Of a stretch of DNA of 64,000 nucleotides, positions 1,035-56,256 are shown in pieces (the first letter of the stretch is position 1; each line of letters opens with the position of its first letter). The notes under the pieces are model-generated. The model did not search any database. It had not been told where the DNA came from and saw only the letters and a list, made by a program, of their open reading frames with translations. The stretch is from IMG/VR virus record IMGVR_UViG_3300044796_000662, positions 1 to 64,000 of that record. One strand, given 5' to 3'. A program made the translations under genes and the position numbers.

Positions 1035-1553
1035 CTACACCGCGGATCGGGCCTTGCGCACGTGGACGTACGGGCAATCGAGAATTCGCAGGGCTTCCTC
1101 GACGTTGGCCTTGGTCAGCCCGTATTGAGGGTTCACGTGGACGAACCTGTCGGTTAGGTGGGCCATCTCCGTGTCATCGTCAAGGATGACGAAAGATTCG
1201 ACCTCGTAGCGTGTGGTGTCGAGCCACGCCTGGATCTCGTGGCCGCGCTGGTCGCGGCGGTACGGTTTGATCTCCGGGGTCTTGTCGAGGATCTTACCCT
1301 TGTACCCGCGCCCGTTGAGGATGTCGCAGAGCTGCGTGCGCATCCGGCCGATGCGCCAAGCTGAGCTGACGACCGCGTAAGCGTTGCCTCTGGTCACGAG
1401 GTCGTTGAGGAGCACAACCGCGATCGGATCGATGTCGTCGCGCTCGTGGACGTACCCAGGCTGCGACGTGTTGTTCTGAAGCAGGTACTCCGTGTTGTTC
1501 AACACGCCGTCGAAGTCGAGGAAGACCACCCGAACCTTTGTCGGGCGCATCAC
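1035..1553 (-). CDS. HAD-superfamily protein (Swiss-Army-knife RNA-repair-like HAD)
   Basis: 'VFLDFDGVLN', 'VVSSAWR', 'RGHEIQAWL', 'FVILDDD' motifs. Confidence 0.85.
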   Translation of the reverse strand: MMRPTKVRVVFLDFDGVLNNTEYLLQNNTSQPGYVHERDDIDPIAVVLLNDLVTRGNAYAVVSSAWRIGRMRTQLCDILNGRGYKGKILDKTPEIKPYRRDQRGHEIQAWLDTTRYEVESFVILDDDTEMAHLTDRFVHVNPQYGLTKANVEEALRILDCPYVHVRKARSAV

Positions 1554-2408
1554 TCACCGATCCGGTTTGCTGGCCTGCCGAACATGCAGCTCCCCTACAC
1601 CGAGGACGTCGAGCCTCACGGGCAGGCCCATGAAGTCGCGCAGGAACCGAGACTCGTGGGACTCCAACATCCGGTTGACGCTCACGAGCAGGTACTTCTT
1701 GCCGGAGGGTAGCGACGCCGGCTGCACGTCCACGAACCATGCACAAGCCGAGTAGAGTCTCTTGAAGACCTCCGCGGCGCGAGCTTCTGGGCGTTCGAGG
1801 GCCGAGATCGCAGCCTTGGGTTGCTTCTGAATGACCGGCTTGGGCTCCGACTTCTTCGTCTCCTCTCCGAGGATTTCACGCTGCTCCTCGGGGGGTTTCT
1901 TCGTCCACTCGTCGATCAAGATGCAGCGGCCAACGGAGCCAGCGTGCGGGTTGGTCTGGATCGCTCGGATGCACGCTTCGCAGAAGCGCTGCTTGCGCTT
2001 GACGGAGAACTTCGTCGCGGTGGCGTTGTTACAGCCCTGGCATTCGAGGCCGTCATCACGAGCCCGCATCATCTCCATCTCGTGGAGCATCTCCGCCCGC
2101 TCTTCCTGGTAGGTGAGGAACTCGCCGTACTCCTCGGCAGCGGCCACGTTCTCCATGGCGCCCTCGGGCAGGACGGTCACGCAGATCCGCTCACGGGTGC
2201 GCCTGTCCCGCTTCACGACGAACAGGATCTTGCGGGTCTTGTCGTTGGCAACCCAAAGCTCTTGCCCGCCCCTGGTCCGGGTCTTCTCCGGCCGGGCGCC
2301 CTCTGACAGAATGAGCAGCTCTTCCCGTGCCTGCTTGGAGGTCAGGTGGGGTGCCCACCTCTCCCGGTAGCGCTCGATGGCATGGGGCATGATGCTGAGC
2401 CGGCTCAT
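1554..2408 (-). CDS. hypothetical protein ('HAIERY.ER' N-terminal domain, central CxxC..CxxC)
   Basis: ORF. Start set at ATG 2408, 10 nt after CGGTGTA. Confidence 0.7.
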   Translation of the reverse strand: MSRLSIMPHAIERYRERWAPHLTSKQAREELLILSEGARPEKTRTRGGQELWVANDKTRKILFVVKRDRRTRERICVTVLPEGAMENVAAAEEYGEFLTYQEERAEMLHEMEMMRARDDGLECQGCNNATATKFSVKRKQRFCEACIRAIQTNPHAGSVGRCILIDEWTKKPPEEQREILGEETKKSEPKPVIQKQPKAAISALERPEARAAEVFKRLYSACAWFVDVQPASLPSGKKYLLVSVNRMLESHESRFLRDFMGLPVRLDVLGVGELHVRQASKPDR

Positions 2409-2484
2409 TGTCACCACCTACACCGGACGCACTGCGCTACCCCAAAAAACGTAGGGTTTCCGCTCTTCTACATGGGGGTCTTTT

Positions 2485-2521
2485 CGGGTTGATTCTGGCC
2501 GATCTCGGGTTGTAGTCCCCT
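2485..2521 (+). promoter_or_regulatory. repeated 37-bp promoter-like element, copy 1 (TTGATT-N16-TGTAGT)
   Basis: 34/37 identical to 58757-58793. Both copies precede + strand gene runs. Confidence 0.7.
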
Positions 2522-2527
2522 CAGGTG

Positions 2528-2890
2528 ATGACCATGAGCGAGCTGCAACTCTACTACGACAACTTCCGCGCTGGCTGGTGGGCTTCGGAGAACGAGGACG
2601 AGTGCGCCTGCCATGGTAAGGGTTGGGCTCTGTCGGAGGTGGACACGTGGCACAAGTGCCCCGTGCACTTCCACGGTCAGCCTTCCCCCGAGGACTGCGA
2701 CGGCTTCGAGTCGGCTGAGGAGTACGAGACCTACCGTGACATCTGCCTGGTCACGTGGGCCGTCGAGCACGGCCTGGCCGAGTACACCCCCGCGGAGACC
2801 TCTCGCCGCGCCGCTGAGCGTGCCGAGGCTCTCAGCTACCTGCCCCCGGTCGTGGCGACCGAGGGCGACGACGCCGACATCCCCTTCTGA
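2528..2890 (+). CDS. hypothetical Cys-containing protein with SSB-like acidic tail (DDADIPF)
   Basis: ORF directly after the repeated promoter. Confidence 0.7.
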   Translation: MTMSELQLYYDNFRAGWWASENEDECACHGKGWALSEVDTWHKCPVHFHGQPSPEDCDGFESAEEYETYRDICLVTWAVEHGLAEYTPAETSRRAAERAEALSYLPPVVATEGDDADIPF

Positions 2891-2896
2891 GGCCCC

Positions 2897-3115
2897 ATGG
2901 ATACCAAGGTCAGCATCGAAGAGACGATCGACGAAGCAGCGCTCGAAGCCGAGGATACCGCCAGGAAGTCCAAGTGGTTCTCCTCGCTGCCTACCCTGCC
3001 GCAGCGCCAGGACTCGCTCCTGGACCAGCTCCGCGACCTCCAGGCCGTCGCCAACCGGCTTGGCATGTACGACGCGGCCGACTTCCTCTCCACGACGTTG
3101 AGGAGGATCCCGTGA
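2897..3115 (+). CDS. hypothetical protein
   Basis: ORF. Its stop overlaps the next GTG. Confidence 0.7.
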   Translation: MDTKVSIEETIDEAALEAEDTARKSKWFSSLPTLPQRQDSLLDQLRDLQAVANRLGMYDAADFLSTTLRRIP

Positions 3116-3738
3116 CCGCCGAAGAAGACAAGGCCACATTCCCCGACTTCAAGACGAACGGGATGCCCAAGTTCCCCATGGTCGGGGAGGAGATCTACGT
3201 GCCCACGTGCACGGGGGTCAACTGCTACATCGTCGGCGGCCGCGCCAAGGTCAAGCAGATCCTTGGCCCGACCAAGATCGAACAAGGGGGACGCCCCTCG
3301 GCACGCAACTCGGTCAAGAACGCGAACATCGAGGTCGAGGAGCACCCTGGCCAGCTCTTCAAGTGGTCGGACCTCCGCGACACGCAGTACGCGCTCTGGA
3401 TGGAGTTCAAGTCGAACCGCACCCGGATGGCCACGATGGAGGAGGGCGAAGAGATCCGGCTGCGCGACCAGCGGCGAACGGAAGCGCTCAACGAGCTGCG
3501 GGTCGAGCGGGAAGAGGAATTCCGCGAACGGCCGTGGAGCGGTGACGGATCAGGTAAACCTTCTCCGCCCACACACAGCTTGAAAGTGCAAGAGGCCGGC
3601 AGCTCGTGGTGGGCGACCGTGGGCGCGGGGTGGCAGCGCACGGATGGGTCGTTTTACGTCAAGCTCAACCCCGGCACCGTGCTCTCTTGGAGGGACGACA
3701 TCAAGATCGGGCTGTTCCCACCGAAGCGCCGCTACTAG
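3112..3738 (+). CDS. hypothetical protein, C-terminal DUF736-like segment
   Basis: 'WATVGAGWQRTDGSFYVKLN' pattern. GTGA overlap start. Confidence 0.6.
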   Translation: MTAEEDKATFPDFKTNGMPKFPMVGEEIYVPTCTGVNCYIVGGRAKVKQILGPTKIEQGGRPSARNSVKNANIEVEEHPGQLFKWSDLRDTQYALWMEFKSNRTRMATMEEGEEIRLRDQRRTEALNELRVEREEEFRERPWSGDGSGKPSPPTHSLKVQEAGSSWWATVGAGWQRTDGSFYVKLNPGTVLSWRDDIKIGLFPPKRRY

Positions 3739-3754
3739 AACCAAAGGACCGATC

Positions 3755-4057
3755 GTGCCCCTCAAGATCAAGTCACTCTCCCCGAAGAGCCCCACCCACG
3801 AGTCACTGAAGGAGCACGCCGAGGCCATCGCGCACGCGCTCAATCTCACCGCCGAGCAGGGCGGGATCCTCTCGCACGAGATCCGCAACGCCATCACTCC
3901 GCTTGCGATGTTGTCGCCGGAAGACGACTACGAGGAGGTCTTGCGGGACGTGCAAATTGCCGTCCGGCGCATCATCGCCCTGTGCGACGTGTTCAATCCG
4001 CCCCTGACGGCAGGACAGTCACCCGCGAGACGGCCTTCAGGTGGACAGGGCGGTTGA
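3755..4057 (+). CDS. small protein with histidine-kinase H-box-like segment
   Basis: 'GILSHEIRNAITPL'. No ATPase or sensor domain. Confidence 0.55.
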   Translation: MPLKIKSLSPKSPTHESLKEHAEAIAHALNLTAEQGGILSHEIRNAITPLAMLSPEDDYEEVLRDVQIAVRRIIALCDVFNPPLTAGQSPARRPSGGQGG

Positions 4058-4217
4058 GGGCCATCCCTTCCCGTGTGCTGCGGATGGGGAGAACGACCAG
4101 TTCATCCTGTAGAACCTGATCGACGACCGCCTCAGTGACCCAACTCGACGGCCCCATGTGGCTCGCATAGATGAGCTTCGAGCCGACCTTGATCGAAGTG
4201 CCGCGCCAGTCCTTCAT
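3993..4217 (-). CDS. hypothetical phage protein
   Basis: 'MKDWRGTSIKVGS' start. CGGTGTA lies 10 nt upstream. Confidence 0.65.
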   Translation of the reverse strand: MKDWRGTSIKVGSKLIYASHMGPSSWVTEAVVDQVLQDELVVLPIRSTREGMALNRPVHLKAVSRVTVLPSGAD

Positions 4218-4227
4218 GGGGCGCCCC

Positions 4228-4241
4228 TACACCGTGGTGTA
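4228..4241. promoter_or_regulatory. divergent pair of YGGTGTA elements
   Basis: TACACCGTGGTGTA between divergent starts 4217 and 4252. Confidence 0.7.
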
Positions 4242-4251
4242 ACAGTAGGGG

Positions 4252-4668
4252 GTGAGCCTCAAAGAGAAGATCCGAAAGATCGCGGCCGAGAAGAACGGCC
4301 CGTCCATCTCGGTCCCCGTGCTGAACGATCCGACGAAGGCGCTCTCGCTGCCGGAGAGCTACCGCGACGAGCTGCTCCTGGCCTACAGCATCAAGCTCGA
4401 AGACCTCACGGGCGAGTCGCCCTTCCACATGGTCTTCGTGCGTGAGGGCGTCGCGTTCTGCATGCTGAGCAAGCACGATGGCGGTGGGATGCGCACGGTC
4501 ATCCACGGAGTGGACCTGCGACCGGGCGAGGACGCCAACATCTACATGGTGGGCTCCGAGGTCTACGAGATCTGGAAGGCGTTCGAGCCCGATCAGCTCA
4601 TGACCTACGAGCAGCTCACGAAGAACTACGACAAGCTCCCCCGTACGCTTCAGAAGCGCTTCAACTGA
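4252..4668 (+). CDS. hypothetical protein
   Basis: Coding-like ORF. Confidence 0.7.
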   Translation: MSLKEKIRKIAAEKNGPSISVPVLNDPTKALSLPESYRDELLLAYSIKLEDLTGESPFHMVFVREGVAFCMLSKHDGGGMRTVIHGVDLRPGEDANIYMVGSEVYEIWKAFEPDQLMTYEQLTKNYDKLPRTLQKRFN

Positions 4669-4670
4669 AC

Positions 4671-5189
4671 GTGGACACGACAGGCTTCAACGACGAGGAG
4701 CACGCGAACGTCCGAGAGATGTTCTCGTCAATCCTAGACCTGGTCTTGGGTTACAGCGACCGCCTAGACCTTCTCGTGCACTTCGTGGAAGAGCGACTGG
4801 ACGCGAGGGAGTGCAAGTTCGGCACGTTGATCCCGGTCCCCACTCTGACGTTCTCCTTCACGAAGGGGATCTCCACGCCCATCCCGGTGATCATGGTGCC
4901 GTTCGATTGGAACATGCAGGGCCTCCTTGCCGACATCCTGGATGCGATCCGCGTCTGTTCACAGATGACCGACTACTTCCACGGCGTGTTCATCGGACAG
5001 ACGGACCTCTCGGCTCTTCGTGCAGAGGCGTATCAAGCCGAGTGGGTCAAAACCACAGTGCACTTCGGCGCTGAAGCGAGAAACCCTCGTATGCTGGACC
5101 TGATCCAGAGATACCCAGAAGGTTTGGACTCGCCGCACATCAAGCACTTGGTCTACATCCTCAAACCGTACATTTCGCTGAATGACTGA
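4671..5189 (+). CDS. hypothetical protein
   Basis: Coding-like ORF in operon. Confidence 0.65.
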   Translation: MDTTGFNDEEHANVREMFSSILDLVLGYSDRLDLLVHFVEERLDARECKFGTLIPVPTLTFSFTKGISTPIPVIMVPFDWNMQGLLADILDAIRVCSQMTDYFHGVFIGQTDLSALRAEAYQAEWVKTTVHFGAEARNPRMLDLIQRYPEGLDSPHIKHLVYILKPYISLND

Positions 5190-5214
5190 CCCCAGCGGTG
5201 TAGGTACTGCCACG

Positions 5215-5514
5215 ATGGCAGACTTGAAACCTGGGAGATCGGATCGCCAGACGCTTTCGGCGCTTCTGCTCTCTGGCAAGCTGACCCCTTCCGAAGAGAA
5301 GGCGTTCCGGTCCATGTACAACTCGCTGGAGACCGGCCAGATACGACTCACCCCGCCACAACGCATGTGGGCCGACGAGGTCTACAAGAAGCTCAAGCTC
5401 GACACGGCGGAGCCCTCGCGCTTCAAGAAGCTGCCGGCTGGCGCGCCGATGCCAGAGCATCCGTACGACAAAATGAAGGCGAGTTTGCCTCTGAAGCCTC
5501 CGGGAAAGAAATGA
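5215..5514 (+). CDS. hypothetical protein
   Basis: ATG 12 nt after CGGTGTA (5196-5202). Confidence 0.65.
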   Translation: MADLKPGRSDRQTLSALLLSGKLTPSEEKAFRSMYNSLETGQIRLTPPQRMWADEVYKKLKLDTAEPSRFKKLPAGAPMPEHPYDKMKASLPLKPPGKK

Positions 5515-5744
5515 GCACCGTGCGAACCGAAGAGGTGACGCTGGTCCTCATCCCGAAGCTCCAGCCGCAGCGCACGCAGCGCATGGAGTTGAAGTACAAG
5601 AGGGGCAAGTCAGAGCACCTCGCTCTCGTGTGTCAGACGGCCGAAGATGGCACTGGCTACGTGAGCACCACCAGCACACACTTGGGCAAAGACGACATCG
5701 AAGAGCTGATCGAAAGGCTCATCGAAGCAAGAGGAGAGATGTGA
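5511..5744 (+). CDS. hypothetical protein
   Basis: ATGA overlap with the upstream gene. Confidence 0.55.
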   Translation: MSTVRTEEVTLVLIPKLQPQRTQRMELKYKRGKSEHLALVCQTAEDGTGYVSTTSTHLGKDDIEELIERLIEARGEM

Positions 5745-6004
5745 TGCCTGCGAATCGAGTCCATCCGCGTACGTTCACGAAGTGCGGGCACAAGGGCCTC
5801 GGGGCCTACTGTCATCGTTGCGCGGAGGGGGACCGACTCATCGCAATCGGCAAGGGCGAGGCCAAGCCCGCAGCGCCGGGCAAGAACCGCCGCGTCGAGT
5901 CCTTCAAGGGCTGGTCCAAGGACGCCTTTCTCAAGGAGGGCGCTCGCCTGAAAGCCCCTCGGGTGAGAGAGAACACGTTCACTCCCACCACCGAAGGCGG
6001 TTGA
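5744..6004 (+). CDS. small Cys/His protein
   Basis: 'KCGH...YCHRC'. TGATG overlap. Confidence 0.55.
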   Translation: MPANRVHPRTFTKCGHKGLGAYCHRCAEGDRLIAIGKGEAKPAAPGKNRRVESFKGWSKDAFLKEGARLKAPRVRENTFTPTTEGG

Positions 6005-6035
6005 CGGCTGTCCTATTGCTCGGTACGCCGAGACG

Positions 6036-6449
6036 ATGCCAAGTGAGACGTTCGAATCCCGCCAGGAGATGGACAGGCGGGCCCAGTCCCTTCAAGAGCA
6101 AGGCGACCGTGTGCTTGTGGACGATGACCCCGACTCGGGTGTTCTCGGCTACAACGTGCTGGCCATCGCAGGTCGCGAGAGCACCAAGCTTCGGCACTAC
6201 TTGTTCGGGTTCGGGCTGACGCCCACCGTGCAGGTAGCCGAATCCGTCGAGGAGTTCCTCACCTGGATTCAGAGGCACGAGAAGCACTTCCGCATCCGGT
6301 CGAACGCTTCTCGCGAACGACAGATCGGCATCGTGTGCTTCTGTGAGGCTTTTCAGCGCCGGTCCCTGGTCTTCCGGCTCGCGGTAGAGAAAACCCGTCA
6401 GGCGCCCCCTGGGGCACTGGCAGAACTCGTCCGCCTCACGTCGGTCTAG
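6036..6449 (+). CDS. hypothetical protein
   Basis: ORF. Confidence 0.6.
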   Translation: MPSETFESRQEMDRRAQSLQEQGDRVLVDDDPDSGVLGYNVLAIAGRESTKLRHYLFGFGLTPTVQVAESVEEFLTWIQRHEKHFRIRSNASRERQIGIVCFCEAFQRRSLVFRLAVEKTRQAPPGALAELVRLTSV

Positions 6450-6982
6450 TCGTCGTCATCCGTGGACATGAGCCGCTTCCAGGCGGTGTCCTTGGGCTCG
6501 GACCGTTTCCTGGTCTCGTTCGGGAGCGACTCCTGCGCCTCCGGATCGTAGTGCCTGTGCAGAAGCACGGTTCCCCCGAACTCGACGATCTCGCCCATCA
6601 AGAAGTGCTGGACGGCGCTCTCGTTGTACGGCCCCACGAACACGAACGAGTTGGGCGACGAGTGCTTGACCACGACAAGGATCATCCGCTTGTGCTTCAT
6701 GAGCACCGTGTCGAACATCGGCGCGATGTAGCAGAAGAACTCCTCGTTGCGCCGGCGATTTGGCGACAAGCGTGTCTGCCGCATGATCGAGCCGTGACCA
6801 GAGTCCCACTCGACTGCGGGGTCTTGCTTGTCCCGAAGGACAGGACGAGAGGAACTTCCGAGCCCAACCCGGATGACGAAAGGCTCCGTAGACTCCATCG
6901 GCCGCACGGTCGTGAGGACGATGGACTTCGGCAGCGTGTCGTAGTCGATGTGCGGGCCAGAGCCTACGAGGTGGATGATCAT
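6446..6982 (-). CDS. hypothetical protein with C-terminal TAWKRLMSTDDDD tag
   Basis: ATGA overlap start. Shared tail motif. Confidence 0.65.
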   Translation of the reverse strand: MIIHLVGSGPHIDYDTLPKSIVLTTVRPMESTEPFVIRVGLGSSSRPVLRDKQDPAVEWDSGHGSIMRQTRLSPNRRRNEEFFCYIAPMFDTVLMKHKRMILVVVKHSSPNSFVFVGPYNESAVQHFLMGEIVEFGGTVLLHRHYDPEAQESLPNETRKRSEPKDTAWKRLMSTDDDD

Positions 6983-7215
6983 TCGTCGTCCCCGTCCATG
7001 GTTGGGGCGAGGTCCATTTGGCGGCGACGCTCCGCCTCGAAGAGAACGCCAAGGGCCTTCACTTCGGCCGTCGTCATCCACTCTGACTTGCACTTGGAGC
7101 AGGTGCGGATCGGGAAGGTCTCCGGGACCGTGCATAGGACCCCGCGGTACTTCCGCGTACGGCCGGCGACGCAGACCACGGTGATCTCACCGCCGCATTC
7201 TGCGCAGGACTTCAT
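6979..7215 (-). CDS. YgiT/MqsA-type zinc-finger protein
   Basis: 'MKSCAECGG...RTCSKCKSEWM'. Confidence 0.65.
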   Translation of the reverse strand: MKSCAECGGEITVVCVAGRTRKYRGVLCTVPETFPIRTCSKCKSEWMTTAEVKALGVLFEAERRRQMDLAPTMDGDDE

Positions 7216-7685
7216 CACGCCTCTGCGACCTGGCGCTGCGGCCGGCGGTTGATGTGCTCTAGCCACCACGTGAGCTTCTTCGTGTTGCGGTCCCAGAAGT
7301 ACCAGGTGCGCCGGGGTTTCATCGCGAAGAAGAGCGTCCAGGCGCGGTCCTTGAGCAAGTCCACCCTGTGGTAGTCCTCGCCCTTGATGAAGTTCAGCGA
7401 GAAGGGGAGCACGGGTCGGGTCACTACCCGCGAGCCGAACCGCCGCTCCTCGATGTAGCCGCCCGTCAGGATGAGCGAGACCGATGTCTCCCACGGGTGG
7501 CTGTGCAGCTCTGGTTCGGCGTCCCCGCTCACGAACAGGTGGAGGAACAGGTTGTACGGGCGGTCCTCCCGACCGAGGAGGTAGTACCGGACGAGATACG
7601 GCTCACCGTCAGGTCGAGGAATGACCTTCTTGGGGAACCTCGCCGCCACCCTCTCGCAGATCGCTTCGATCAACCGCCCGATCAT
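7215..7685 (-). CDS. phage cupin-like protein
   Basis: 'LFLH.F..GD....LHSHPW...S.IL.GGY.E' and 'DYHRVDL...AWTLF'. Confidence 0.7.
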   Translation of the reverse strand: MIGRLIEAICERVAARFPKKVIPRPDGEPYLVRYYLLGREDRPYNLFLHLFVSGDAEPELHSHPWETSVSLILTGGYIEERRFGSRVVTRPVLPFSLNFIKGEDYHRVDLLKDRAWTLFFAMKPRRTWYFWDRNTKKLTWWLEHINRRPQRQVAEA

Positions 7686-7878
7686 GCCCGTCATCTACAC
7701 CGGACACGCACGCATCACAGACCACCATGCCGGAAAGTCCTAGCCCGACCGCTTCGACCTCGATCGCGATGGCCGTTCCGTCCGTGAAGAAGAACCGCCA
7801 GACGTTGACGGCGCGGGTGTCGATGCGCTTGATGGTCTTGCCGACGAAGTCTCGCGGCTTGGGGTTACGATGTGACAT
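7609..7878 (-). CDS. hypothetical protein
   Basis: ORF with AGGAG upstream. Confidence 0.5.
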   Translation of the reverse strand: MSHRNPKPRDFVGKTIKRIDTRAVNVWRFFFTDGTAIAIEVEAVGLGLSGMVVCDACVSGVDDGHDRAVDRSDLREGGGEVPQEGHSST

Positions 7879-7887
7879 GGGGCTCCT

Positions 7888-8730: not shown

Positions 8731-8785
8731 TGTACCTAACTAGTACACCGACTCGGTGTACTAGAACAAGAGGAGACCAACCCCC

Positions 8786-9628: not shown

Positions 9629-10029
9629 TGGAGCCTAGCAGCGTCGTCGCCCTGCTCTCGCGCGTCAACCAGTTCGGGACGCGCGAGGTGTGCTGTACGA
9701 CCAGGCGTAACGAGCCCGAGAACCTGTCGCTGCCCGGTGGCGGCATCAAGCCGGGGGAAGACCCGGTCATCGCGTTGGTTCGCGAGTGCGGTGAGGAACT
9801 CGGCAGGGGTCTACGGATCCTCGCTCTGCGGTTCGTCTACGAGCGCGTGGATCCCGTGGACCAAAAGGTGGCGTGGGTCTTCGAGATCACGCAGTGGGAG
9901 GGCGAGCCCCAACAGAACGAAGAAGGCATCGGCGTGTCCTGGCAGAAGCCAGAGCGCCTTCTCTGGGAGGGGTGCACCTTCCGCGAGTACAACCGTGGCC
10001 TCTTCAAGGCGGTAGGGCTGATCCCGTGA
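9625..10029 (+). CDS. Nudix hydrolase
   Basis: Nudix box 'PGGGIKPGEDPVIALVRECGEELG'. Confidence 0.85.
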   Translation: MMEPSSVVALLSRVNQFGTREVCCTTRRNEPENLSLPGGGIKPGEDPVIALVRECGEELGRGLRILALRFVYERVDPVDQKVAWVFEITQWEGEPQQNEEGIGVSWQKPERLLWEGCTFREYNRGLFKAVGLIP

Positions 10030-10476
10030 CTCTCATGTGGCTCGAAACGAAGCGGCTTCTCACGCCTGGACGCGTGGATGCCGACCTGCGCACGGTCTTG
10101 GATCGCAGGTTCAAGACCGTGTCGCTGGCGCGGCAGGGACTTCAAGCTGGGGAACTCGGCTCTTGGCGCGTCATCTACCCGAGGCACCCCACTTTCGGCG
10201 GAGCGGTGGTCCTGCGGCGCAACGGCCACCGCATCGTCTTCCGAACGGAGTGTGAGAACGACTGGTCGGCCTGGTGTTGCTATGTCATGTGCTCGGAACT
10301 CGCTGTCCTGTACCAGGCGGAGTGCGGCGAAGAAGGCGTCGATGTCACGTGGACAGCCGATCTCTCGAAGTGGCCTCGGTTCGAAGACTTCGTACGAACG
10401 GTGTATCGACGCACGAACGAACAGACTATCCAGTCACATCTTGATGAAGTTCCTGTCGCGCTGCTAGGAGAGCCGC

Positions 10477-11231: not shown

Positions 11232-11234
11232 GCT

Positions 11235-11744: not shown

Positions 11745-11807
11745 CGTGTCCTCCCTACACCACCCGAAAGGTCGCCCAGGTGATGCTTTTTATGCACCCT
11801 CAAAGGC

Positions 11808-12195: not shown

Positions 12196-12241
12196 CTCCT
12201 CTCTTACACCGGACGGTCCTGAAGACGGTGTACTTCTTTCC

Positions 12242-12571: not shown

Positions 12572-12613
12572 AATTCCCCAAGAGATTCCGTCTCCCGGTG
12601 TACGTGTCTCTTC

Positions 12614-16019: not shown

Positions 16020-16022
16020 GAC

Positions 16023-17342: not shown

Positions 17343-17425
17343 GCTGTTTCTTCTACACCTCCAGGGCCGTCGAGTCCCCAAGAAAAGTTCCCTTACTAGG
17401 TGAAGCGGCGGTGTATAAGTAGGAC

Positions 17426-28413: not shown

Positions 28414-28570
28414 CTCAGCTATACAGCGGGATGCTGAAGCGCTCCCTCCCGTTCCGCAAGACCCACGCCAGCGGCACCCCCTTGAAAAAGCATAGGAAAA
28501 GAGCGATAAAGGGTGGCCTGCCGACGAACCACCAGGACTAGGGGGCGCTGATCGGTGTAAGTACGGATCG

Positions 28571-29775: not shown

Positions 29776-29928
29776 GGCAATTCCCCCTACACCGCTGGGC
29801 GAAGATCGTGTATTGTCCGACTATCGCCTTTTTGTCGCACAACGTCTGACGCGCCGCATGAGGGTGGCTCTACGATGATCGTGCGCTATGGTGGAAGTGC
29901 CCGCAGGTCTGAATAAGGACGGTTCCGG

Positions 29929-30267: not shown

Positions 30268-30286
30268 GCGGTGTAGGGGCGCCGCA

Positions 30287-33771: not shown

Positions 33772-33889
33772 CGGCGCGTCCTCTTCAGACGGTGTAAGAA
33801 CCGTGTGGCCCATTGAGCAAGTGGGCCCAAGCCTCAGCGGCACGGGAAGTGTCCCGGACGTTGGAGAGGCGTGAGGAAGGAGAACGCAC

Positions 33890-36451: not shown

Positions 36452-36487
36452 AGTCGTCTGCTACACCAGTGATACGAGGGACCCAGC

Positions 36488-37824: not shown

Positions 37825-37902
37825 AACAGTTCCCTCTAAGGAGGGTTGATAAGCGGTTTCGTCGGTGTAAAGGGGCTACATGCGCACCCCCAAGAGGAGC
37901 TG

Positions 37903-41856: not shown

Positions 41857-41989
41857 GCTCCTACCGGCACACAAGAAGGCTAGTAGCGGCGGCCTCCACG
41901 GCATACGCCACGGATGTAGCTGGGATTTTACGGGACATGCTGGACCCCCAATACACCGGGCCAGGATTTCCTTTTACCCCCACTGGGCT

Positions 41990-42241
41990 GTGGAAGCACT
42001 GACTCGACTCTGTGAAGCTGTACGAACGCTCTCCCCTCAGGGAGAAGTGCGGTTCAGGGGTGTCCCTGATCGCGAAGACTATTGGGTGTGCAACGTGTGG
42101 GTCAGCGACGTGATCCTGTTTCAGTCGGCCGCCGGCCCGTTGGACGAGGTCATCGACCAGGTTCTCTCGAAGATTAAGGCCATGTCGCAGCGGGCTCTTC
42201 GTATTCTGGGACCTGACGGCAACCCACCCGACACGGTGTAA
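41990..42241 (+). CDS. hypothetical protein
   Basis: ORF. Start uncertain. Confidence 0.5.
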   Translation: MEALTRLCEAVRTLSPQGEVRFRGVPDREDYWVCNVWVSDVILFQSAAGPLDEVIDQVLSKIKAMSQRALRILGPDGNPPDTV

Positions 42242-43932: not shown

Positions 43933-43960
43933 GTCCGGCAATTACACCGAACAGCGTCCC

Positions 43961-44944: not shown

Positions 44945-45063
44945 GGGACGGCCCTTCAGACGGACCCCCAACCTTGGGGATCTACACCGAGAGCATCGCC
45001 TTTTTTGGGGGTAAACGCCAGGCACCGCATCTGAATCGGTGGTCGTCCTGGATTTTCCGGCAC

Positions 45064-45531
45064 TTACGGGACGGCGAGCAGGGCTGTCCGCATCCATTCG
45101 GGCACGGGACCCGCCTGATCGAAGCCGAAAGCCGCCCACCGATCCGGCACGTTTCGGAGCTGAAGAACACGGCTCCCCGAGACGACGCTCTGGATCAGGA
45201 GCGCGAGCATCTTCGCGCCCGCGACGCTTTTCTTCTTCTTCAGGACGCCGAACATCTTGGTCGCCGACGCCCCGACCTGCTCACCGCTCCACGCAGACAT
45301 CGACGCGGGCACGAAGAGGTAGCTCTTGACAAGCTCCTCACCCTGCTTCGCGGGAAACGTCTGCACGATCGCGAGAACGAGGGTGGCTTCGAAGAGCGCC
45401 GGATCCTTCTCCTGGAACGAGAAGCCGCGCATCGCGGGGAAGGAGCTGTAAAGGAGGCGCTGCTTCTCGTTCGGTTCTTCGCCGAGGAAGACACGGTGGA
45501 ACTTGTTGGGATCACTCACGACCAGGGACAT
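45064..45531 (-). CDS. hypothetical protein
   Basis: ORF. Confidence 0.55.
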   Translation of the reverse strand: MSLVVSDPNKFHRVFLGEEPNEKQRLLYSSFPAMRGFSFQEKDPALFEATLVLAIVQTFPAKQGEELVKSYLFVPASMSAWSGEQVGASATKMFGVLKKKKSVAGAKMLALLIQSVVSGSRVLQLRNVPDRWAAFGFDQAGPVPEWMRTALLAVP

Positions 45532-45895
45532 ACACCAGCAAGGCGCAGAAAAAAGTCCGTAGGAAGTTGGCCCGTGCGGTGTACTCCAGGTCTCATGCCC
45601 TCGCTGGGGGTTCGTCCACAAGTTTCCGGTAGTTCTCTTGTAGACGAACCCTCCAAGTCACCGAAGCGAACCCCCGCCCCATCCCCAAAGCGCATGGAAC
45701 TTCTTGCAGTCTGGCCCGAGCGTGACTATCTATCGACGATCTTGTCGAAGGTCAGCTCCCTCGTGCGGCCGGACTCTGTGTCAAATCTCCACGAAATTGC
45801 AGCACTCTGCGCCCCTCGAAGTTTGGGGGACGTGGCTGACGGACGGTCTCATTGCTCGGTTCGCCGAGACAGGACCGCCCGCTATCGGAGGCAAG

Positions 45896-49134: not shown

Positions 49135-49159
49135 ACGAGGCGGTGTAGGAGAGCCCTAC

Positions 49160-50188: not shown

Positions 50189-50917
50189 CTACACCAAGCC
50201 CAACGTCTCGACCAGACCCCCAACGGCCGCTTCGAGAACGTCCAGGCTCTCGGAGTGGTTGAGCAGGTGATAGTCGAAGAGGGAGTCCGGGATCGCGTTC
50301 TGTTCCGTTTCGCTCTGGTGCTTCGCCGATGCGCCCACGAGGCCCGAGTTCTTGCGGACGATGCGTACGACCTTGCCGCCGGCTGCCGAGACTGCATCGA
50401 CCTCGTTGCGGAAGCGAACGTCACTGATCACGACCCCCTTGGGCTTTGGACCCACCGGGACATTCGTGACTGCGAGCCCGCCCTTGGCGTTGTACGAGTA
50501 GTGGACGCTGCGGAGGATGCCGCTCTTGTGCAGGAGATTGTCTGCCACACGCAGCGCGTAGTCCACCCACACGTTCTGGTAGCAGTCCCGCCCCCACTCG
50601 CTGCCCAAGAGCTGCAAGGCGAGCCGAGGAGTGAGGAAGCACGCCTTGTTGTCCGCCTCCTCGTAGGAGACGTTGCAGCACCCGCAGGCCATCCCCTCCT
50701 CGTAGATCGAGTGTGCCCGAGGATAGCGCTCGTCGGCGGCGTTGCGCATCGCGCTTGGCCCCCAGAGCTGCTCGTCGGTGAAGTTGAAGACATCCTTGCA
50801 GATGCGCTTGAGCGGGTCAGCGAAGGCCACCTTGACGAACCCGTGATTCTTCACGAGGAAGTCGGCGACCGTATCCTTGCCTGAGCCCGCGACACCACAT
50901 AGACCGACGACGTTCAT
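50189..50917 (-). CDS. deoxynucleoside monophosphate kinase
   Basis: 'GVAGSGKDT', 'AFADPLK', 'TPR..LQ.LGSEWGR', 'ISDVRFRNE', 'HQSE'. Confidence 0.92.
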   Translation of the reverse strand: MNVVGLCGVAGSGKDTVADFLVKNHGFVKVAFADPLKRICKDVFNFTDEQLWGPSAMRNAADERYPRAHSIYEEGMACGCCNVSYEEADNKACFLTPRLALQLLGSEWGRDCYQNVWVDYALRVADNLLHKSGILRSVHYSYNAKGGLAVTNVPVGPKPKGVVISDVRFRNEVDAVSAAGGKVVRIVRKNSGLVGASAKHQSETEQNAIPDSLFDYHLLNHSESLDVLEAAVGGLVETLGLV

Positions 50918-50984
50918 GCGCCTCCACGTGAGCCGTATGGGCCCAGCGTGGCCGTCCCTACACCACTTGTGGCCGTGCCATCAT

Positions 50985-51458: not shown

Positions 51459-51824
51459 ACGCTGCACCGGAGACCTTGGGGCTTTCACGGGTCTCCCCAC
51501 ACCTGGCAGCCTTTTGACCCCAACTCGCACGCGCGTACGAGTATCGGTATCTGCTCAGTTGGTACTGTCGTCTCCGATGCAGCGTCCAACACACGATGGA
51601 AGCCCCCACCGGGATTCGACCCGGGTCTCCGACTTTATAGGTCGGCGTGTTCATCCTCGGCCCACGAGCCGATCGTATCTCGTGGTACCTGCCCGCCCTG
51701 GCGCCAGAGAGCGCAGGTTTTTCCGGTGGATGCGCGGTCGAGCTGCTCCGCCTACTACTATGGGGACCCCCAAACTACAACCCCAGCGAGCGCGGAATCA
51801 ACTTGTCGAGCGAGATAGGTTGTG

Positions 51825-53809: not shown

Positions 53810-54463
53810 TCAGGGAACGAGTTGACCGAGAGATCGCCTGAGATTTTCGCGCGCCCGCACCTCGAAGATCGACCTGAAGCGGGATGTCACGTAGATGTGC
53901 GAACGTGCCAGGAAGTCATTGAGGATCTTGCCTCGCCCGAGCCTGTACTGCTCCCACGGGACGAACTCGTACTCGGCGCGGATGTCCTTCTCGTACTGGT
54001 CAAAGACCTCCGGGGTCTCCCCGAGAATCGAGAGGTCGATGTCCACCATGTACTGGTAACGGTCGGCCATGGTCTCGACGCTGGCCGCGTGCTTCGTGTA
54101 CCCAATCATGTCCGCGACCTCTGCGAGAAGCTTCTCGTTGAGCCCCATCCGACGCCCCGCCCGGTGCATCGCGAAAGTGCTCTCTTCCTCGTTGTTCGAG
54201 CGGCCAGGAATGTAGACGTAATCGTGCCACCAGAGCGCCAATTCCACGTGGTTCAAGTCCGCTCCCACGGGCACGTGAGCGTCCAGGAGGTCCAGGCACG
54301 CCTTGATGTGCACGAGCGAGTGGTAGTGCCGGACAGGCCCGTAGTACGCCTTCACGAGGTCCGTGTAGACTTCGTCCGCGACGTCCATGTCCGCGCCGAG
54401 ACGCTTGGCGAAGAGCATCCAGCGGGTTTCTAGCTGCTCGGAAAGCATCGTCTCGGTGGTCAT
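53810..54463 (-). CDS. HD-superfamily phosphohydrolase (COG4339-like)
   Basis: 'RHYHSLVHI', 'WWHDYVY', 'NEEES', 'DIDLSILG', 'IRAEY'. Confidence 0.88.
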   Translation of the reverse strand: MTTETMLSEQLETRWMLFAKRLGADMDVADEVYTDLVKAYYGPVRHYHSLVHIKACLDLLDAHVPVGADLNHVELALWWHDYVYIPGRSNNEEESTFAMHRAGRRMGLNEKLLAEVADMIGYTKHAASVETMADRYQYMVDIDLSILGETPEVFDQYEKDIRAEYEFVPWEQYRLGRGKILNDFLARSHIYVTSRFRSIFEVRARENLRRSLGQLVP

Positions 54464-55092
54464 CACTTGGTCTCCTTGGGGTCGTCCAGGAGCTTCTTCA
54501 AGCCGCGGGGGTTGATGATACCACCATGACCCCCGGGTCTTGGCGTACGACCGTCGATGTACGCGCTCACGTCGGCTCCGTAGCGGCAACCGATGAGCCC
54601 TACGTCCACCTCCTGGTCGATCTTGCGGATGATGCCTGTCGGATCGATGTGAACCGTCACGCGCCAGGACATCGAGTCGCAAGTCATCTCCCCGGTGGTC
54701 ACACGGATGGAGGACGGTCGCAGCGCGTGCACGACGTTGAGTGCCGCGTTGTTCCATGGCCTCCCGTTGAGGAACTCCAAGACCGGGATGACCGTGCCGC
54801 CCCAACGGTCCAACTTCTGAGGCTGCACACTCCAGGTGGAGCGGTACTTGTCGGATTCGTCAGTCTCCGTCCAACGGTGGGGTTGCAGCTCCTTGTCCCA
54901 CTCTTCGGCCTCCGGACTGCCGGAGACGACCTCGTAGCACTTCCAGCCGATAGGGACCTGCTTCGGGTCATCCCCGGGCAGGACCGTGACGCCTTCTCGT
55001 CGTGGAATCACGATGTCCGGTTTGGGGGCATCGACCGTCAGTCTAAGCTGCGCGGGATCCGTGATGAGACGGTTCTTCCAGTCGTCACTCAT
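54463..55092 (-). CDS. hypothetical protein with peptidase-inhibitor-I78-like segment
   Basis: 'IRV..GEMTCD...WRVTVHID..G.I..I'. Confidence 0.6.
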   Translation of the reverse strand: MSDDWKNRLITDPAQLRLTVDAPKPDIVIPRREGVTVLPGDDPKQVPIGWKCYEVVSGSPEAEEWDKELQPHRWTETDESDKYRSTWSVQPQKLDRWGGTVIPVLEFLNGRPWNNAALNVVHALRPSSIRVTTGEMTCDSMSWRVTVHIDPTGIIRKIDQEVDVGLIGCRYGADVSAYIDGRTPRPGGHGGIINPRGLKKLLDDPKETK

Positions 55093-55108
55093 GCTCGGCA
55101 CTACACCG

Positions 55109-56218
55109 TCAGTCGAAGACCGAGGACACAGAACCGAGCATGACACGGATGCGGTGTCGGCTGCCAAGTTGGTAGGTCTCGAACTCGCTGTAGCTCTTCG
55201 GCGTGTACGGCCAGGAGTCGCCCTTGCGGCCCGTGAACGTGACCGTGTAGCTCTCCTCGCGACCGGACTCACGCTCCTGCTCCCCATCCTGCAAGGGCGG
55301 CGGAGTCGTGTCGGGCCACCTGACATCGGACGTGGTGCCGTTCGCCATGGCGTCTCGGTTGTGCCCCCAACCCCAGAAGTCCCACTCGTAGAAGTCCGCG
55401 TAGATCGGCAGGTCTGCGTAGTCGTTCACGCTGCATGTCTTCGGGTCGCAGATCGTGGAGCAGACAGGGTCCGCCTGCGTGCAGCTCTTGAAGCCGTTGT
55501 TCAGCTTCGTGCACACGGGCTTGGGCGTCGTGCAACTGCTCCTGTCCGTGCGGCAGTTTTTCGTGCCACAGAGGGACGCGTCGGTCACACGGTGATGGCC
55601 GACCAGGACATGGTAGTTCCACCCGTTCTGACGCTGCCCGTCGTTGACGAGGTTCAGCGCACCCGAGGGCACGGTGAAGCCGCTGTCATGCCGCAGCGAG
55701 TAGCGGTCGATGTGGATGGTGCGCTGCCAGGCGAGAGCCGTGACCGTGCCGTGCAGGTCGAGGGGCTTGAAGAGGAAGTAGCCGCCGATGATGAGCGCCA
55801 GGACGATCGGGATAGCGATGGCCCACCATGGCAGGCCCTTGGAACGACGGCGCGTTTCCAAGATGGGAGGGGGAGCGTAAGACGACATGGTCTTCCGCCC
55901 TTCAGGCCGGGTCGGAGCTTCAGAGGAGAATGAGCGTGCGCGGGGAGTCTCCCCCTGGTCCTGCGAAACGCCGCACTGCACGCACTCCCCGCTGTCCCGA
56001 CGCTCGGCCGAGCCGCAGAAACGACACTTCCAGTCCACCCCCGCAGCCGCCTGCTCGACGAAGGACTCGTCGGCCACGGGCGTCAGACCGCCGTCGTCGA
56101 TGTCCCCATCCACGTCTGTCTTCGGCTTCCCGCAGACCTCGCAGACCTTGAGGTGGCCCTCGTTGAGGTGCTTGTTCTCACACTCCCACTTCAACTCGAC
56201 GAAGAACTGACGCGACAT
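55109..56218 (-). CDS. zinc-ribbon + TM + Cys-rich extracellular protein
   Basis: 'WEC..', 'DWKCRFCG', TM 'WWAIAIPIVLALIIGGYFLF'. Confidence 0.75.
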   Translation of the reverse strand: MSRQFFVELKWECENKHLNEGHLKVCEVCGKPKTDVDGDIDDGGLTPVADESFVEQAAAGVDWKCRFCGSAERRDSGECVQCGVSQDQGETPRARSFSSEAPTRPEGRKTMSSYAPPPILETRRRSKGLPWWAIAIPIVLALIIGGYFLFKPLDLHGTVTALAWQRTIHIDRYSLRHDSGFTVPSGALNLVNDGQRQNGWNYHVLVGHHRVTDASLCGTKNCRTDRSSCTTPKPVCTKLNNGFKSCTQADPVCSTICDPKTCSVNDYADLPIYADFYEWDFWGWGHNRDAMANGTTSDVRWPDTTPPPLQDGEQERESGREESYTVTFTGRKGDSWPYTPKSYSEFETYQLGSRHRIRVMLGSVSSVFD

Positions 56219-56256
56219 GCCCCTATTCTTACACCAGGTGGTGTATCGTGGGCACC

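What the first reader, a model, noticed from the sequence alone, without database searches (positions are those of the whole stretch)
1036..56245. Pervasive YGGTGTA element 9-13 nt upstream of start codons (phage promoter class, near-leaderless mRNAs)
CGGTGTA/TGGTGTA precedes more than 25 genes on both strands, e.g. 1036, 2419, 4228/4235, 5196, 7696, 8744/8754, 12205/12226, 12596, 17409, 20193/20200, 28553, 30269, 49141, 56230/56239. The spacing is nearly fixed and the spacer often lacks a Shine-Dalgarno. It forms back-to-back pairs at divergent genes and is often built into the upstream gene's Val-stop (GTG TAR). Inference: a -10-like element for a phage-encoded sigma factor or RNAP, making almost every gene its own short-leader transcript. 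It also corrects many start calls.
Basis: partly seen in the sequence, partly recalled or inferred. Interest (0 to 1): 0.68.

Follow-up and report, generated by a model that had tools for sequence, protein, structure and literature searches.

The report
Seven-base promoter-like motif before phage genes
A huge soil/peat phage places the same 7-base word (YGGTGTA) about 10 bases before the start codon of roughly a third of the genes in this window, most likely as a minimal promoter that makes messenger RNAs with little or no leader, a layout its closest relatives share and its distant relatives lack.

Summary
YGGTGTA occurs 40 times in the window against 5.5 expected. In 28 of those copies (plus 2 AGGTGTA) an ATG or GTG that opens a real ORF lies 9-13 nt downstream, most often 10. 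The host record is a 363-kb fragment of a phage of about 570 kb, with roughly 90-100 non-random copies.

Only the 7-mer is conserved. There is no -35 element and no T at the -7 position, and the spacer is poor in Shine-Dalgarno sequence.

Several results favour a DNA-level promoter over a translation signal:
- Back-to-back copies fill 35-bp divergent intergenic regions.
- Copies that sit 18-47 nt from a start are often followed by a normal SD leader.
- One copy lies 15 nt upstream of the phage tmRNA gene.
- All 12 sites compared keep their position in a relative with 48-83% protein identity.
- More distant relatives have a classic SD before the same gene.

The start site itself was not measured, because the only RNA data were assembled contigs. 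No phage RNA polymerase or sigma region 2 was found in the 363 kb. "Every gene its own transcript" overstates the case, and the Val-stop claim holds for only 3 of 59 sites.

Two further promoter-like classes were found.

Verdict: a new variant of a known kind (a phage promoter class giving leaderless mRNAs). Interest 0.6.

The parts
1036..1042 (-). CGGTGTA, start-adjacent
   Evidence: GTG 1025 after a 10-nt gap (ORF 729-1025). Its TAG is the stop of upstream ORF 1035-1553.
2419..2425 (-). CGGTGTA, start-adjacent
   Evidence: ATG 2408, gap 10 (ORF 1554-2408).
4228..4234 (-). CGGTGTA, start-adjacent, back-to-back with 4235
   Evidence: ATG 4217, gap 10.
4235..4241 (+). TGGTGTA, start-adjacent
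   Evidence: GTG 4252, gap 10 (ORF 4252-4668).
5196..5202 (+). CGGTGTA, start-adjacent
   Evidence: ATG 5215, gap 12.
7696..7702 (-). CGGTGTA, start-adjacent
   Evidence: ATG 7685, gap 10.
8744..8750 (-). CGGTGTA, start-adjacent, paired with 8754
   Evidence: ATG 8730, gap 13.
8754..8760 (+). CGGTGTA with an SD-containing leader
   Evidence: ATG 8786 lies 25 nt downstream, with AGAGGAGA in between.
11756..11762 (-). TGGTGTA, start-adjacent
   Evidence: ATG 11744, gap 11.
12205..12211 (-). CGGTGTA, start-adjacent, divergent pair
   Evidence: ATG 12195, gap 9. Conserved in L020 at 2451.
12226..12232 (+). CGGTGTA, start-adjacent, divergent pair
   Evidence: ATG 12242, gap 9. Conserved in L020 at 2480.
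12596..12602 (+). CGGTGTA, start-adjacent
   Evidence: GTG 12614, gap 11. L020 2854 has GTG at gap 10.
17354..17360 (-). AGGTGTA, start-adjacent
   Evidence: ATG 17342, gap 11 (aldolase-like gene). Conserved in L020 at 7393 and L069 at 914. Distant relatives have an SD here.
17409..17415 (+). CGGTGTA, start-adjacent
   Evidence: ATG 17426, gap 10. Conserved in L020 at 7449 and L069 at 863.
18950..18956 (-). CGGTGTA with an SD-containing leader
   Evidence: ATG 18931 lies 18 nt downstream, with AAGGAAG in between. L020 8746 has a 17-nt gap.
20193..20199 (-). CGGTGTA, half of the 14-bp palindrome TACACCGCGGTGTA
   Evidence: ATG 20182, gap 10 (AAA ATPase). The divergent starts are only 35 bp apart.
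20200..20206 (+). CGGTGTA, other half of the palindrome
   Evidence: ATG 20218, gap 11. This copy is absent in L020.
24927..24933 (-). AGGTGTA, start-adjacent
   Evidence: ATG 24916, gap 10. L020 14596 matches.
26443..26449 (-). CGGTGTA, start-adjacent
   Evidence: GTG 26433, gap 9. L020 16093 matches.
26864..26870 (+). CGGTGTA with a long conserved leader
   Evidence: ATG 26917 lies 46 nt downstream. Motif and leader (TTTAACGAGCGCAC...AGGAAGAACCTC) are both conserved in L020 at 16497.
28553..28559 (+). CGGTGTA, start-adjacent
   Evidence: ATG 28571, gap 11. L020 18484 matches.
29788..29794 (-). CGGTGTA, start-adjacent
   Evidence: ATG 29775, gap 12. L020 19758 matches.
30269..30275 (+). CGGTGTA, start-adjacent
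   Evidence: ATG 30287, gap 11. L020 20164 matches.
36462..36468 (-). TGGTGTA, start-adjacent
   Evidence: ATG 36451, gap 10.
37863..37869 (+). CGGTGTA followed by a 7-codon mini-ORF and an SD-led gene
   Evidence: ATG 37880 at gap 10 opens 7 codons. AGGAG and ATG 37903 follow.
42234..42240 (+). CGGTGTA, start-adjacent
   Evidence: ATG 42254, gap 13.
43943..43949 (-). CGGTGTA, start-adjacent
   Evidence: ATG 43932, gap 10.
45531..45537 (-). TGGTGTA, start-adjacent
   Evidence: GTG 45519, gap 11.
45577..45583 (+). CGGTGTA, start-adjacent
   Evidence: ATG 45595, gap 11 (170-aa ORF). It overlaps another call, so the gene model is uncertain.
49141..49147 (+). CGGTGTA, start-adjacent
   Evidence: ATG 49160, gap 12.
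50190..50196 (-). TGGTGTA, start-adjacent to a small ORF
   Evidence: GTG 50178, gap 11 (55 aa).
50959..50965 (-). TGGTGTA with an SD-containing leader
   Evidence: ATG 50917 lies 41 nt downstream, with GGAGG in between.
55102..55108 (-). CGGTGTA, start-adjacent
   Evidence: ATG 55092, gap 9.
56230..56236 (-). TGGTGTA, divergent pair
   Evidence: ATG 56218, gap 11.
56239..56245 (+). TGGTGTA, divergent pair
   Evidence: ATG 56257, gap 11.
1596..1602 (-). CGGTGTA copy, unassigned
   Evidence: The ATG at gap 10 opens no ORF of 40 aa or more.
10399..10405 (+). CGGTGTA copy, unassigned
   Evidence: The next gene start, 10477, is 71 nt away.
33790..33796 (+). CGGTGTA copy, intergenic, unassigned
   Evidence: No ATG or GTG at gap 9-13. 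The gene downstream starts near 33890-33905.
41952..41958 (-). CGGTGTA copy, possibly leadered
   Evidence: The ATG at gap 13 opens only a short ORF. The main ORF starts at ATG 41904, 47 nt away.
44983..44989 (-). CGGTGTA copy, start uncertain
   Evidence: Only a TTG at gap 11.
59486..59492 (-). TGGTGTA copy, probably chance
   Evidence: Antisense inside gene 58955-59887.
61075..61081 (+). TGGTGTA copy, possibly leadered
   Evidence: 48 nt before the NAMPT start at ATG 61130.
2488..2516 (+). Second promoter-like class: GTTGATTC-N10-YYGGGTTGTAGT
   Evidence: One of 15 copies with identical architecture in the record. GTG 2525 follows.
51774..51802 (-). Second promoter-like class
   Evidence: Same 27-nt architecture, with no start codon adjacent.
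58760..58788 (+). Second promoter-like class
   Evidence: Same architecture. Gene 58955-59887 lies 168 nt downstream.

Best explanation
YGGTGTA is the core, and apparently the only conserved part, of one class of promoters of a huge phage from soil or peat. The record holds 363 kb and the genome is probably about 570 kb. The element acts on DNA, in one orientation and without a -35 partner.

Its TA lies at about -12/-11 relative to the first base of the start codon. Transcription would therefore begin at, or within 0-4 nt of, the ATG or GTG and produce leaderless or near-leaderless mRNAs. Where the coding start is further away, the same element drives an ordinary leader that carries a Shine-Dalgarno sequence.

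The class serves accessory genes, replication and repair genes, small ORFs in the tRNA region, and the tmRNA. Structural genes use a different motif.

Shown: the enrichment, fixed spacing, orientation, SD depletion, conservation in close relatives, and presence before a non-coding RNA gene. Inferred: that it is a promoter, where the transcript starts, and that the mRNAs are translated without a leader. Unknown: which polymerase or specificity factor reads it. My best guess is host RNA polymerase with a phage-supplied or phage-modified specificity factor.
For: Enrichment and spacing:
- 40 copies against 5.5 expected.
- Gap histogram peaks at 10 nt with a hard lower edge at 9.
- 137-fold excess before independently called starts, with one-mismatch variants unused.
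- The logo shows only the 7-mer plus a purine-rich 4 nt after it, and nothing at -35.

Placement:
- More frequent at heads of divergent units: 15 of 30 against 11 of 59 tandem genes in the window, and 19 of 62 against 40 of 321 genome-wide.
- Two copies back to back fill divergent gaps of 35-46 bp, leaving no room for another promoter.

SD dichotomy:
- SD core in 7 of 66 sites at gap 9-13 against 10 of 25 at gap 14-69. Leadered examples are 8754, 18950, 37863 and 50959.

Non-coding genes:
- A copy lies 15 nt upstream of the mature 5' end of the phage tmRNA.
- A copy lies 19 nt upstream of a tRNA-Pro/His pair. A translation signal has no role at either place.

Conservation:
- All 12 window sites compared keep their position in L020, whose proteins are 48-83% identical, while the flanking intergenic sequence has diverged. 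One further window site (20200) has no counterpart there.
- L037 has 8 of 9 copies near starts and L069 has 2 of 2.
- Distant relatives have AAGGAG or GGAGG before the orthologous gene instead.

Geometry and context:
- Two other motif classes with promoter-like layouts exist in the same genome, one bipartite and sigma-70-like, also mostly 8 nt from an ATG, and one before structural genes with SD leaders. This fits a temporal programme.
- Motif genes outside the window are replication, repair and nucleotide enzymes.
Against: - No transcription start site was observed. The metatranscriptome that holds the locus is available only as an 18.6-kb contig.
- No RNA polymerase and no sigma region 2 were found in the 363 kb. 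Only region-4-only proteins were found.
- The 10-nt spacer is G+C rich (66%) and lacks the T expected at -7 of a sigma-70 -10 element. The element is therefore not a standard -10 box.
- The purine-rich bases after the motif could act as a weak SD in some genes.
- C at -1 and ATG usage do not differ from SD-led genes.
- The host is unknown, so its capacity for leaderless translation is assumed.
Confidence: 0.6

Rival explanations
1. The motif acts in the RNA as a start-associated translation signal, like the SAS of Cluster K mycobacteriophages. It would be bound by the ribosome, a ribosomal protein or a phage factor, replace the Shine-Dalgarno sequence, and set the start codon 10 nt downstream.
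For: - Fixed distance to start codons.
- SD depletion.
- Precedent of conserved asymmetric sequences immediately upstream of phage gene starts (PMC3203893).
- Many copies lie between tandem genes only about 10-25 nt apart, where translational coupling is plausible.
Against: - Copies occur upstream of the tmRNA and a tRNA pair.
- Copies 18-47 nt from the start are conserved in L020 and often come with their own SD.
- In 35-bp divergent gaps, each mRNA would have to start inside the neighbouring gene for the motif to be transcribed.
- GGUG would pair with only 4 nt of the canonical 16S 3' end (established anti-SD sequence) and sits too far from the start. Other genes in this genome use ordinary AGGAG.
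Confidence: 0.12
2. The motif is the binding site of a phage DNA-binding regulator: an activator, or a repressor in the manner of Cluster A 'stoperators'. It would not be the core promoter. The polymerase would recognise weaker, unseen signals.
For: - The site is asymmetric, oriented with transcription and lies in very short intergenic gaps.
- Palindromic pairs could bind a dimer.
- The phage encodes several helix-turn-helix and sigma-region-4-like proteins.
Against: - Seven bases is short for a specific protein site.
- No other conserved promoter signal exists near these starts, and no sigma-70 consensus promoter was found in the first 20 kb.
- The very sharp spacing to the start codon is what start-site geometry predicts and is not needed for an operator.
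Confidence: 0.13
3. The motif marks an RNA-processing site. A host or phage endoribonuclease would cut long transcripts about 10 nt downstream, producing monocistronic leaderless mRNAs and the precursor ends of tmRNA and tRNA.
For: - Presence both before coding genes and before tmRNA and tRNA.
- Many copies lie inside same-strand gene runs.
Against: - Back-to-back copies at divergent gene pairs still need promoters, and none other is visible.
- The motif is enriched at heads of divergent units.
- There is no structural context. Only 7 nt are conserved.
Confidence: 0.07
4. The pattern is a chance or compositional artefact, for example a codon or stop-codon by-product (Val-stop GTG TAR) of overlapping gene ends.
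For: TAG or TAA is formed by the motif plus the next base in 43 of 59 sites.
Against: - Only 3 of 59 serve as the upstream gene's stop.
- 137-fold positional excess.
- Conserved in relatives.
- Present at divergent junctions, where no upstream gene ends.
Confidence: 0.01

Closest known systems
[quoted passage not shown]
   Same: A single -10-like element with no conserved -35, placed so that +1 falls on the A or G of the start codon. No SD. Both ATG and GTG starts are used.
   Different: The sequence is GGTGTA followed by purines, with no T at -7. It is an almost invariant 7-mer rather than a loose TANNNT. It is carried by a phage lineage. Start sites are not measured here.
T4 late promoters (TATAAATA at -10, read by gp55/gp33 with host polymerase; from established knowledge)
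   Same: One short element without a -35, repeated many times, defining one class within a multi-class phage programme.
   Different: T4 late transcripts have SD leaders and the element is AT-rich. No gp55-like or region-2-bearing protein was detected here.
Start-associated sequences (SAS) of Cluster K mycobacteriophages, 5'-GGGATAGGAGCCC (PMC3203893)
   Same: A conserved asymmetric word immediately upstream of the starts of a subset of phage genes, conserved across related phages even before unrelated genes.
   Different: SAS is 13 bp and contains an SD-like GGAG. The motif here is 7 bp, SD-free, 10 nt from the start, and also precedes a tmRNA gene and SD-led leaders.
Short promoters of jumbo-phage non-virion RNA polymerases (AR9 AACA-N6-TA/G; phiKZ TATG; PMC5312081)
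   Same: Very short consensus elements, used in large numbers by a giant phage, with the start site a fixed few bases downstream.
   Different: Those phages encode split beta/beta' polymerases and their UTRs are 26-491 nt (AR9) or never leaderless (phiKZ). No polymerase genes were found in the 363 kb here, and the spacing implies leaderless RNAs.
Stoperators of Cluster A mycobacteriophages (from established knowledge)
   Same: Asymmetric sites oriented with transcription in short intergenic gaps.
   Different: Stoperators are 13-14 bp repressor sites with no fixed distance to the start codon.

Membership tests
Sigma-70 housekeeping promoter (-35/-10) | A -35 element (TTGACA-like) 16-18 bp upstream of the -10 | tested here: not met
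   Information content is about 0 at all positions from -60 to -2 relative to the motif in 72 aligned sites. The consensus scan found 0 sigma-70 promoters in window 1-20000.
Sigma-70 housekeeping promoter (-35/-10) | A -10 hexamer TAnnnT with a conserved T at -7 | tested here: not met
   TA is invariant, but the position four bases later is mostly G (40 of 72) and T occurs in only 7 of 72.
Leaderless-mRNA promoter | [quoted passage not shown] | tested here: met
   The A of the motif lies 9-13 nt (mode 10) before the ATG or GTG, which places TA at about -12/-11.
Leaderless-mRNA promoter | No Shine-Dalgarno sequence between element and start | tested here: met
   SD core in 7 of 66 (gap 9-13) against 10 of 25 (longer gaps) and 124 of 324 non-motif genes.
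Leaderless-mRNA promoter | Primary 5' end at the first base of the start codon | not testable with these tools
   The RNA run is held only as contigs, and one 18.6-kb contig spans the region.
T4-late-type promoter (gp55) | A phage-encoded minimal sigma (region 2 only) plus co-activator | tested here: inconclusive
   No Sigma70_r2 hit above noise. The weak hits are a spurious frame and a zinc-ribbon protein. Only 363 kb of about 570 kb was searched.
Jumbo-phage own-polymerase promoter (phiKZ/AR9 type) | Phage genes for beta/beta'-like polymerase subunits | tested here: not met
   No RNA_pol_Rpb2_6, Rpb1_2 or T7-like RNA_pol hit at E<=1. No DFDGD-type motif in any called protein. The genome is incomplete.
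Shine-Dalgarno / ribosome-binding site | Complementarity to the 16S 3' end at 5-10 nt from the start | tested here: not met
   Only GGUG could pair with the canonical CACCUCC tail, and it ends 12 nt from the start. Ordinary AGGAG is used elsewhere in this genome. The host 16S is unknown.
Cluster K start-associated sequence | 13-bp GGGATAGGAGCCC-like word containing GGAG immediately before the start | tested here: not met
   The motif is 7 bp with a different sequence and no GGAG.

The most novel reading that the evidence does not exclude
A lineage of roughly half-megabase phages has replaced Shine-Dalgarno-led expression of about a hundred genes with mass production of leaderless mRNAs from a 7-bp, -35-less promoter. 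This would be a private transcription-translation channel that could keep phage genes expressed while host initiation is shut down.
Probability: 0.3. Interest if true: 0.8.

Novelty: new variant of a known kind. Interest (0 to 1): 0.6.

Why it matters
- It gives a simple rule, motif plus 10 nt, for placing gene starts and finding small ORFs in a group of huge uncultured phages whose proteins are mostly unrecognisable.
- It points to a three-class promoter programme that can be read from sequence alone.
- It shows a lineage-specific switch from SD-led to apparently leaderless gene expression. This makes the question of how and why phages use leaderless mRNAs testable by mapping 5' ends and finding the factor that reads a 7-bp element.
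- A 7-bp orientation-specific promoter would also be a compact part for engineering.

Tried and rejected
- RNA evidence. One metatranscriptome (X2) holds the locus, but only as an 18.6-kb contig covering both strands. It gives no ends, strand or level.
- Relatives in IMG/VR. Two scans found none.
- Closest named record by DNA polymerase. LR745208 (485 kb, 34% identity, GC 0.54) has no such motif.
- Polymerase and sigma hunt. Rpb2_6, Rpb1_2, T7 RNA_pol and Sigma70_r2 were all negative. The catalytic-motif regex was negative. Giant ORFs of 1389-2738 aa have no Pfam, PHROG or Atlas lead.
- The weak region-2 hits at 36521 and 42773 were dismissed.
- A full-text paper search for the motif word returned only primers.
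- Intrinsic terminators are not enriched.
- C at -1 and ATG preference do not separate motif genes from SD genes.
- An analogous motif in distant relatives was sought. Only L065 shows a hint, GTATACT 8-9 nt before ATGs.
- Host. The only hints are weak. The GT51 protein's best matches are Polyangiaceae and other Myxococcota MAGs at 40-42% identity. There is also a weak GcrA-like hit and the tmRNA tag ANDNGVAQARAA.
- The stop-codon by-product idea was rejected.

Full report
**What the window is.** The window is the first 64 kb of a 362,937-bp IMG/VR virus record with GC 62.6%. The sequence is found in peat and soil metagenomes.

The record is a huge tailed phage. It encodes a baseplate wedge protein, a family-A DNA polymerase, helicases, DNA methyltransferases, NAMPT and a GT51 transglycosylase. 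It also carries 52 tRNAs, a tmRNA, and two tRNAs with a CUA anticodon inside the window.

An identical protein is on record on a contig of 569,965 bp, so about 200 kb of the phage is not in the record I could search. Most large proteins have no recognisable family.

**The observation.** YGGTGTA occurs 40 times in the window against 5.5 expected from dinucleotide shuffles, with a maximum of 12 in any shuffle.

In the whole record there are 160 GGTGTA copies. The distance from the final A to the next start codon opening an ORF of at least 60 aa is 9, 10, 11, 12 or 13 nt in 11, 26, 13, 5 and 5 cases. No other distance from 0 to 38 nt has more than 5.

I called genes independently from codon statistics, obtaining 383 genes at 89% coding density. 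For 40 of 59 motif-linked genes the start chosen by coding score alone is exactly the motif-linked start.

At gaps 9-13 before called starts the hexamer occurs 58 times against 0.42 expected. One-mismatch variants are almost absent.

In the window, 28 YGGTGTA and 2 AGGTGTA copies are start-adjacent. At least five more sit 18-47 nt before a gene. Only a handful look like chance. Intragenic copies in the whole record number 58, which is the background level for such a hexamer.

Aligning 72 sites shows that only the 7-mer is conserved. The four bases after it are purine- and G-rich. There is nothing at -35 and no T where a sigma-70 -10 box would have its last T.

**Promoter or translation signal?** Several independent results point to a DNA-level promoter.

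1. *Heads of transcription units.* The motif is more frequent at heads of divergent units: 15 of 30 in the window against 11 of 59 tandem genes. At five divergent pairs, two copies lie back to back. At 20193/20200 they form the palindrome TACACCGCGGTGTA inside a 35-bp gap between the two start codons. That leaves no room for any other promoter, and an RNA signal there would require each mRNA to begin inside the neighbouring gene.

2. *A dichotomy with SD.* Sites with a start at 9-13 nt rarely have an SD core in the spacer (7 of 66). Sites whose gene start is 14-69 nt away have one in 10 of 25 (p=0.005). Examples are 8754 (25 nt, AGAGGAGA), 18950, 37863 and 50959. This pattern is expected if transcription starts about 10 nt after the motif, so that the RNA is leaderless when the start codon lies there and SD-led when it does not.

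3. *Non-coding genes.* A copy lies 15 nt upstream of the mature 5' end of the phage tmRNA (record 273915-273920, minus strand). The tmRNA boundaries were confirmed by Rfam. Another copy lies 19 nt upstream of a tRNA-Pro/His pair. A translation signal has no role at either place.

4. *Conservation.* A relative was recovered through a homologous protein. Its proteins in the syntenic region are 35-83% identical to the window's (48-83% for the genes flanking the compared sites), and the contig is 536 kb. L020 is syntenic with window positions of about 11.8-30.9 kb.
   - All 12 window sites I compared are kept at the same place. These include the two with longer leaders and the one with a 46-nt conserved leader. 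The surrounding intergenic sequence has diverged. The copy at 20200 has no counterpart.
   - Two further close relatives also carry the motif next to starts: L037 in 8 of 9 copies and L069 in 2 of 2.
   - More distant relatives of the same gene family have GC 0.32-0.56 and include contigs of 482 and 743 kb. They lack the motif and have a classic AAGGAG or GGAGG before the orthologous gene.
   - The SD-free, motif-led layout is therefore a derived trait of this high-GC subclade.

**Geometry.** With a 10-nt gap, the motif's TA falls at -12/-11 relative to the A of ATG. That is the place of the first two bases of a bacterial -10 element. [quoted passage not shown]

The rest of the element does not fit a housekeeping -10 box. 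There is no T at -7 and the spacer is G+C rich. I therefore call it -10-like in position only.

**Other promoter-like classes.** Looking for variants revealed a second class, GTTGATTC-N10-YYGGGTTGTAGT. It has 15 copies of identical architecture, three of them in the window at 2488, 51802 and 58760.

This class looks bipartite, with a TTGATT -35-like box. In 9 of 15 cases an ATG follows 8 nt after GTA, which is 10 nt after GGGTTG. The other copies have SD leaders. The genes it drives are all ORFans, as expected of early genes.

A third class is a pyrimidine-rich run ending in YTTATS, 20-70 nt before SD-led genes. It is confined to the long minus-strand block of large structural genes, where GGTGTA is rare.

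YGGTGTA genes outside the window include a ClpX-like ATPase, SNF2 and UvrD helicases, NAD-dependent ligase, a Dam-type methylase and a nucleotidase. Three sequence classes with different gene sets fit a temporal transcription programme, with YGGTGTA as the early/middle, non-structural class. That assignment is an inference.

**Who reads it?** This is unknown.
- In the 363 kb there is no multisubunit or T7-like RNA polymerase, no catalytic DFDGD-type motif and no credible sigma region 2.
- There are three proteins with only sigma region 4. One has two such domains, and one is close to region 4.2 of primary sigma factors.
- Free region-4 domains could in principle interfere with -35 recognition and favour -35-less promoters. 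This is speculation.

The host is also unknown. The hints are the Myxococcota matches of the GT51 protein at 40-42% identity and weak alphaproteobacterial signs, namely a sub-threshold GcrA-like hit and the form of the tmRNA tag, the latter judged from memory.

**Comparison with known systems.**
- Closest in layout are leaderless-mRNA promoters of Deinococcus and Actinobacteria.
- Closest in logic are single-element phage promoter classes such as T4 late promoters, and the short AR9 (AACA-N6-TA/G) and phiKZ (TATG) promoters. These give leadered RNAs and come with phage polymerase genes.
- Cluster K start-associated sequences share the 'word before many starts' pattern but are 13 bp and contain GGAG.
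- The motif fails the defining tests of a sigma-70 promoter, an SD and an SAS.

**Verdict.** A promoter function giving leaderless or near-leaderless mRNAs is the best explanation, at a confidence of about 0.6. It remains unproven without 5'-end data. The recognition factor is open. I rate it a new variant of a known kind, interest 0.6.

Noticed in passing
window 2488-2516 (+), 51774-51802 (-), 58760-58788 (+); 12 more in the record (e.g. 79466/79476, 320120/320555, 359282/359335): Second promoter-like class, GTTGATTC-N10-YYGGGTTGTAGT. It has 15 copies of identical 27-nt architecture, often in divergent pairs. An ATG follows 8 nt after GTA in 9 of 15 copies, and the rest have SD leaders. The downstream genes are all ORFans. 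These are likely early, host-sigma-type promoters.
   Followed up: partly
record 142960, 175152, 189087, 191967, 204086, 207107, 210234, 212435, 237511 (minus strand; outside the window): Third promoter-like class: a pyrimidine-rich run ending in YTTATS, 20-70 nt upstream of SD-led genes in the structural-gene block. This is a candidate late promoter.
   Followed up: partly
window 21351-21424 (-) and 21430-21503 (-): Two tandem tRNAs both carry a CUA anticodon (amber suppressors). The first has an 8-nt anticodon loop. TAG ends 75 of 383 called genes, so some TAG read-through is conceivable.
   Followed up: partly
record 237736-238371 (-), about 237.6 kb (-), 301449-301847 (+): Three small proteins contain sigma-70 region 4 but no region 2. 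One has two region-4 domains. One resembles region 4.2 of primary sigma factors (PDB SigA hits, E about 1e-8). They may modulate host polymerase.
   Followed up: partly
window 26871-26916; L020 16503-16553: A 46-nt leader between a motif copy and the 498-aa gene at 26917 is strongly conserved in the relative (TTTAACGAGCGCAC...CATAGGAAGAACCTC). It may be a regulatory 5' UTR.
   Followed up: no
window 17361-17408; L020 7400-7448: Between the divergent motif pair 17354/17409, a block (GAAAGTTCCC..ACTAGGTGAA) is conserved in L020 and L069. It may be an operator.
   Followed up: no
L065 19020-19031 and 7261 (743-kb contig, GC 0.56): A distant relative has the palindrome GTATAC(T) 8-9 nt before divergent ATGs. 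This hints at an analogous, more canonical -10-like leaderless arrangement.
   Followed up: partly
record 192907-201123, 152503-158604, 114295-118857 and others: Giant ORFs of 1389-2738 aa have no Pfam, PHROG or Atlas match.
   Followed up: partly
whole record: IMG/VR labels the record 'provirus' at 76% completeness. An identical protein sits on a 570-kb contig and a Logan contig runs about 970 nt past window position 1. The record is therefore a cut fragment of a larger phage genome rather than an integrated prophage.
   Followed up: partly
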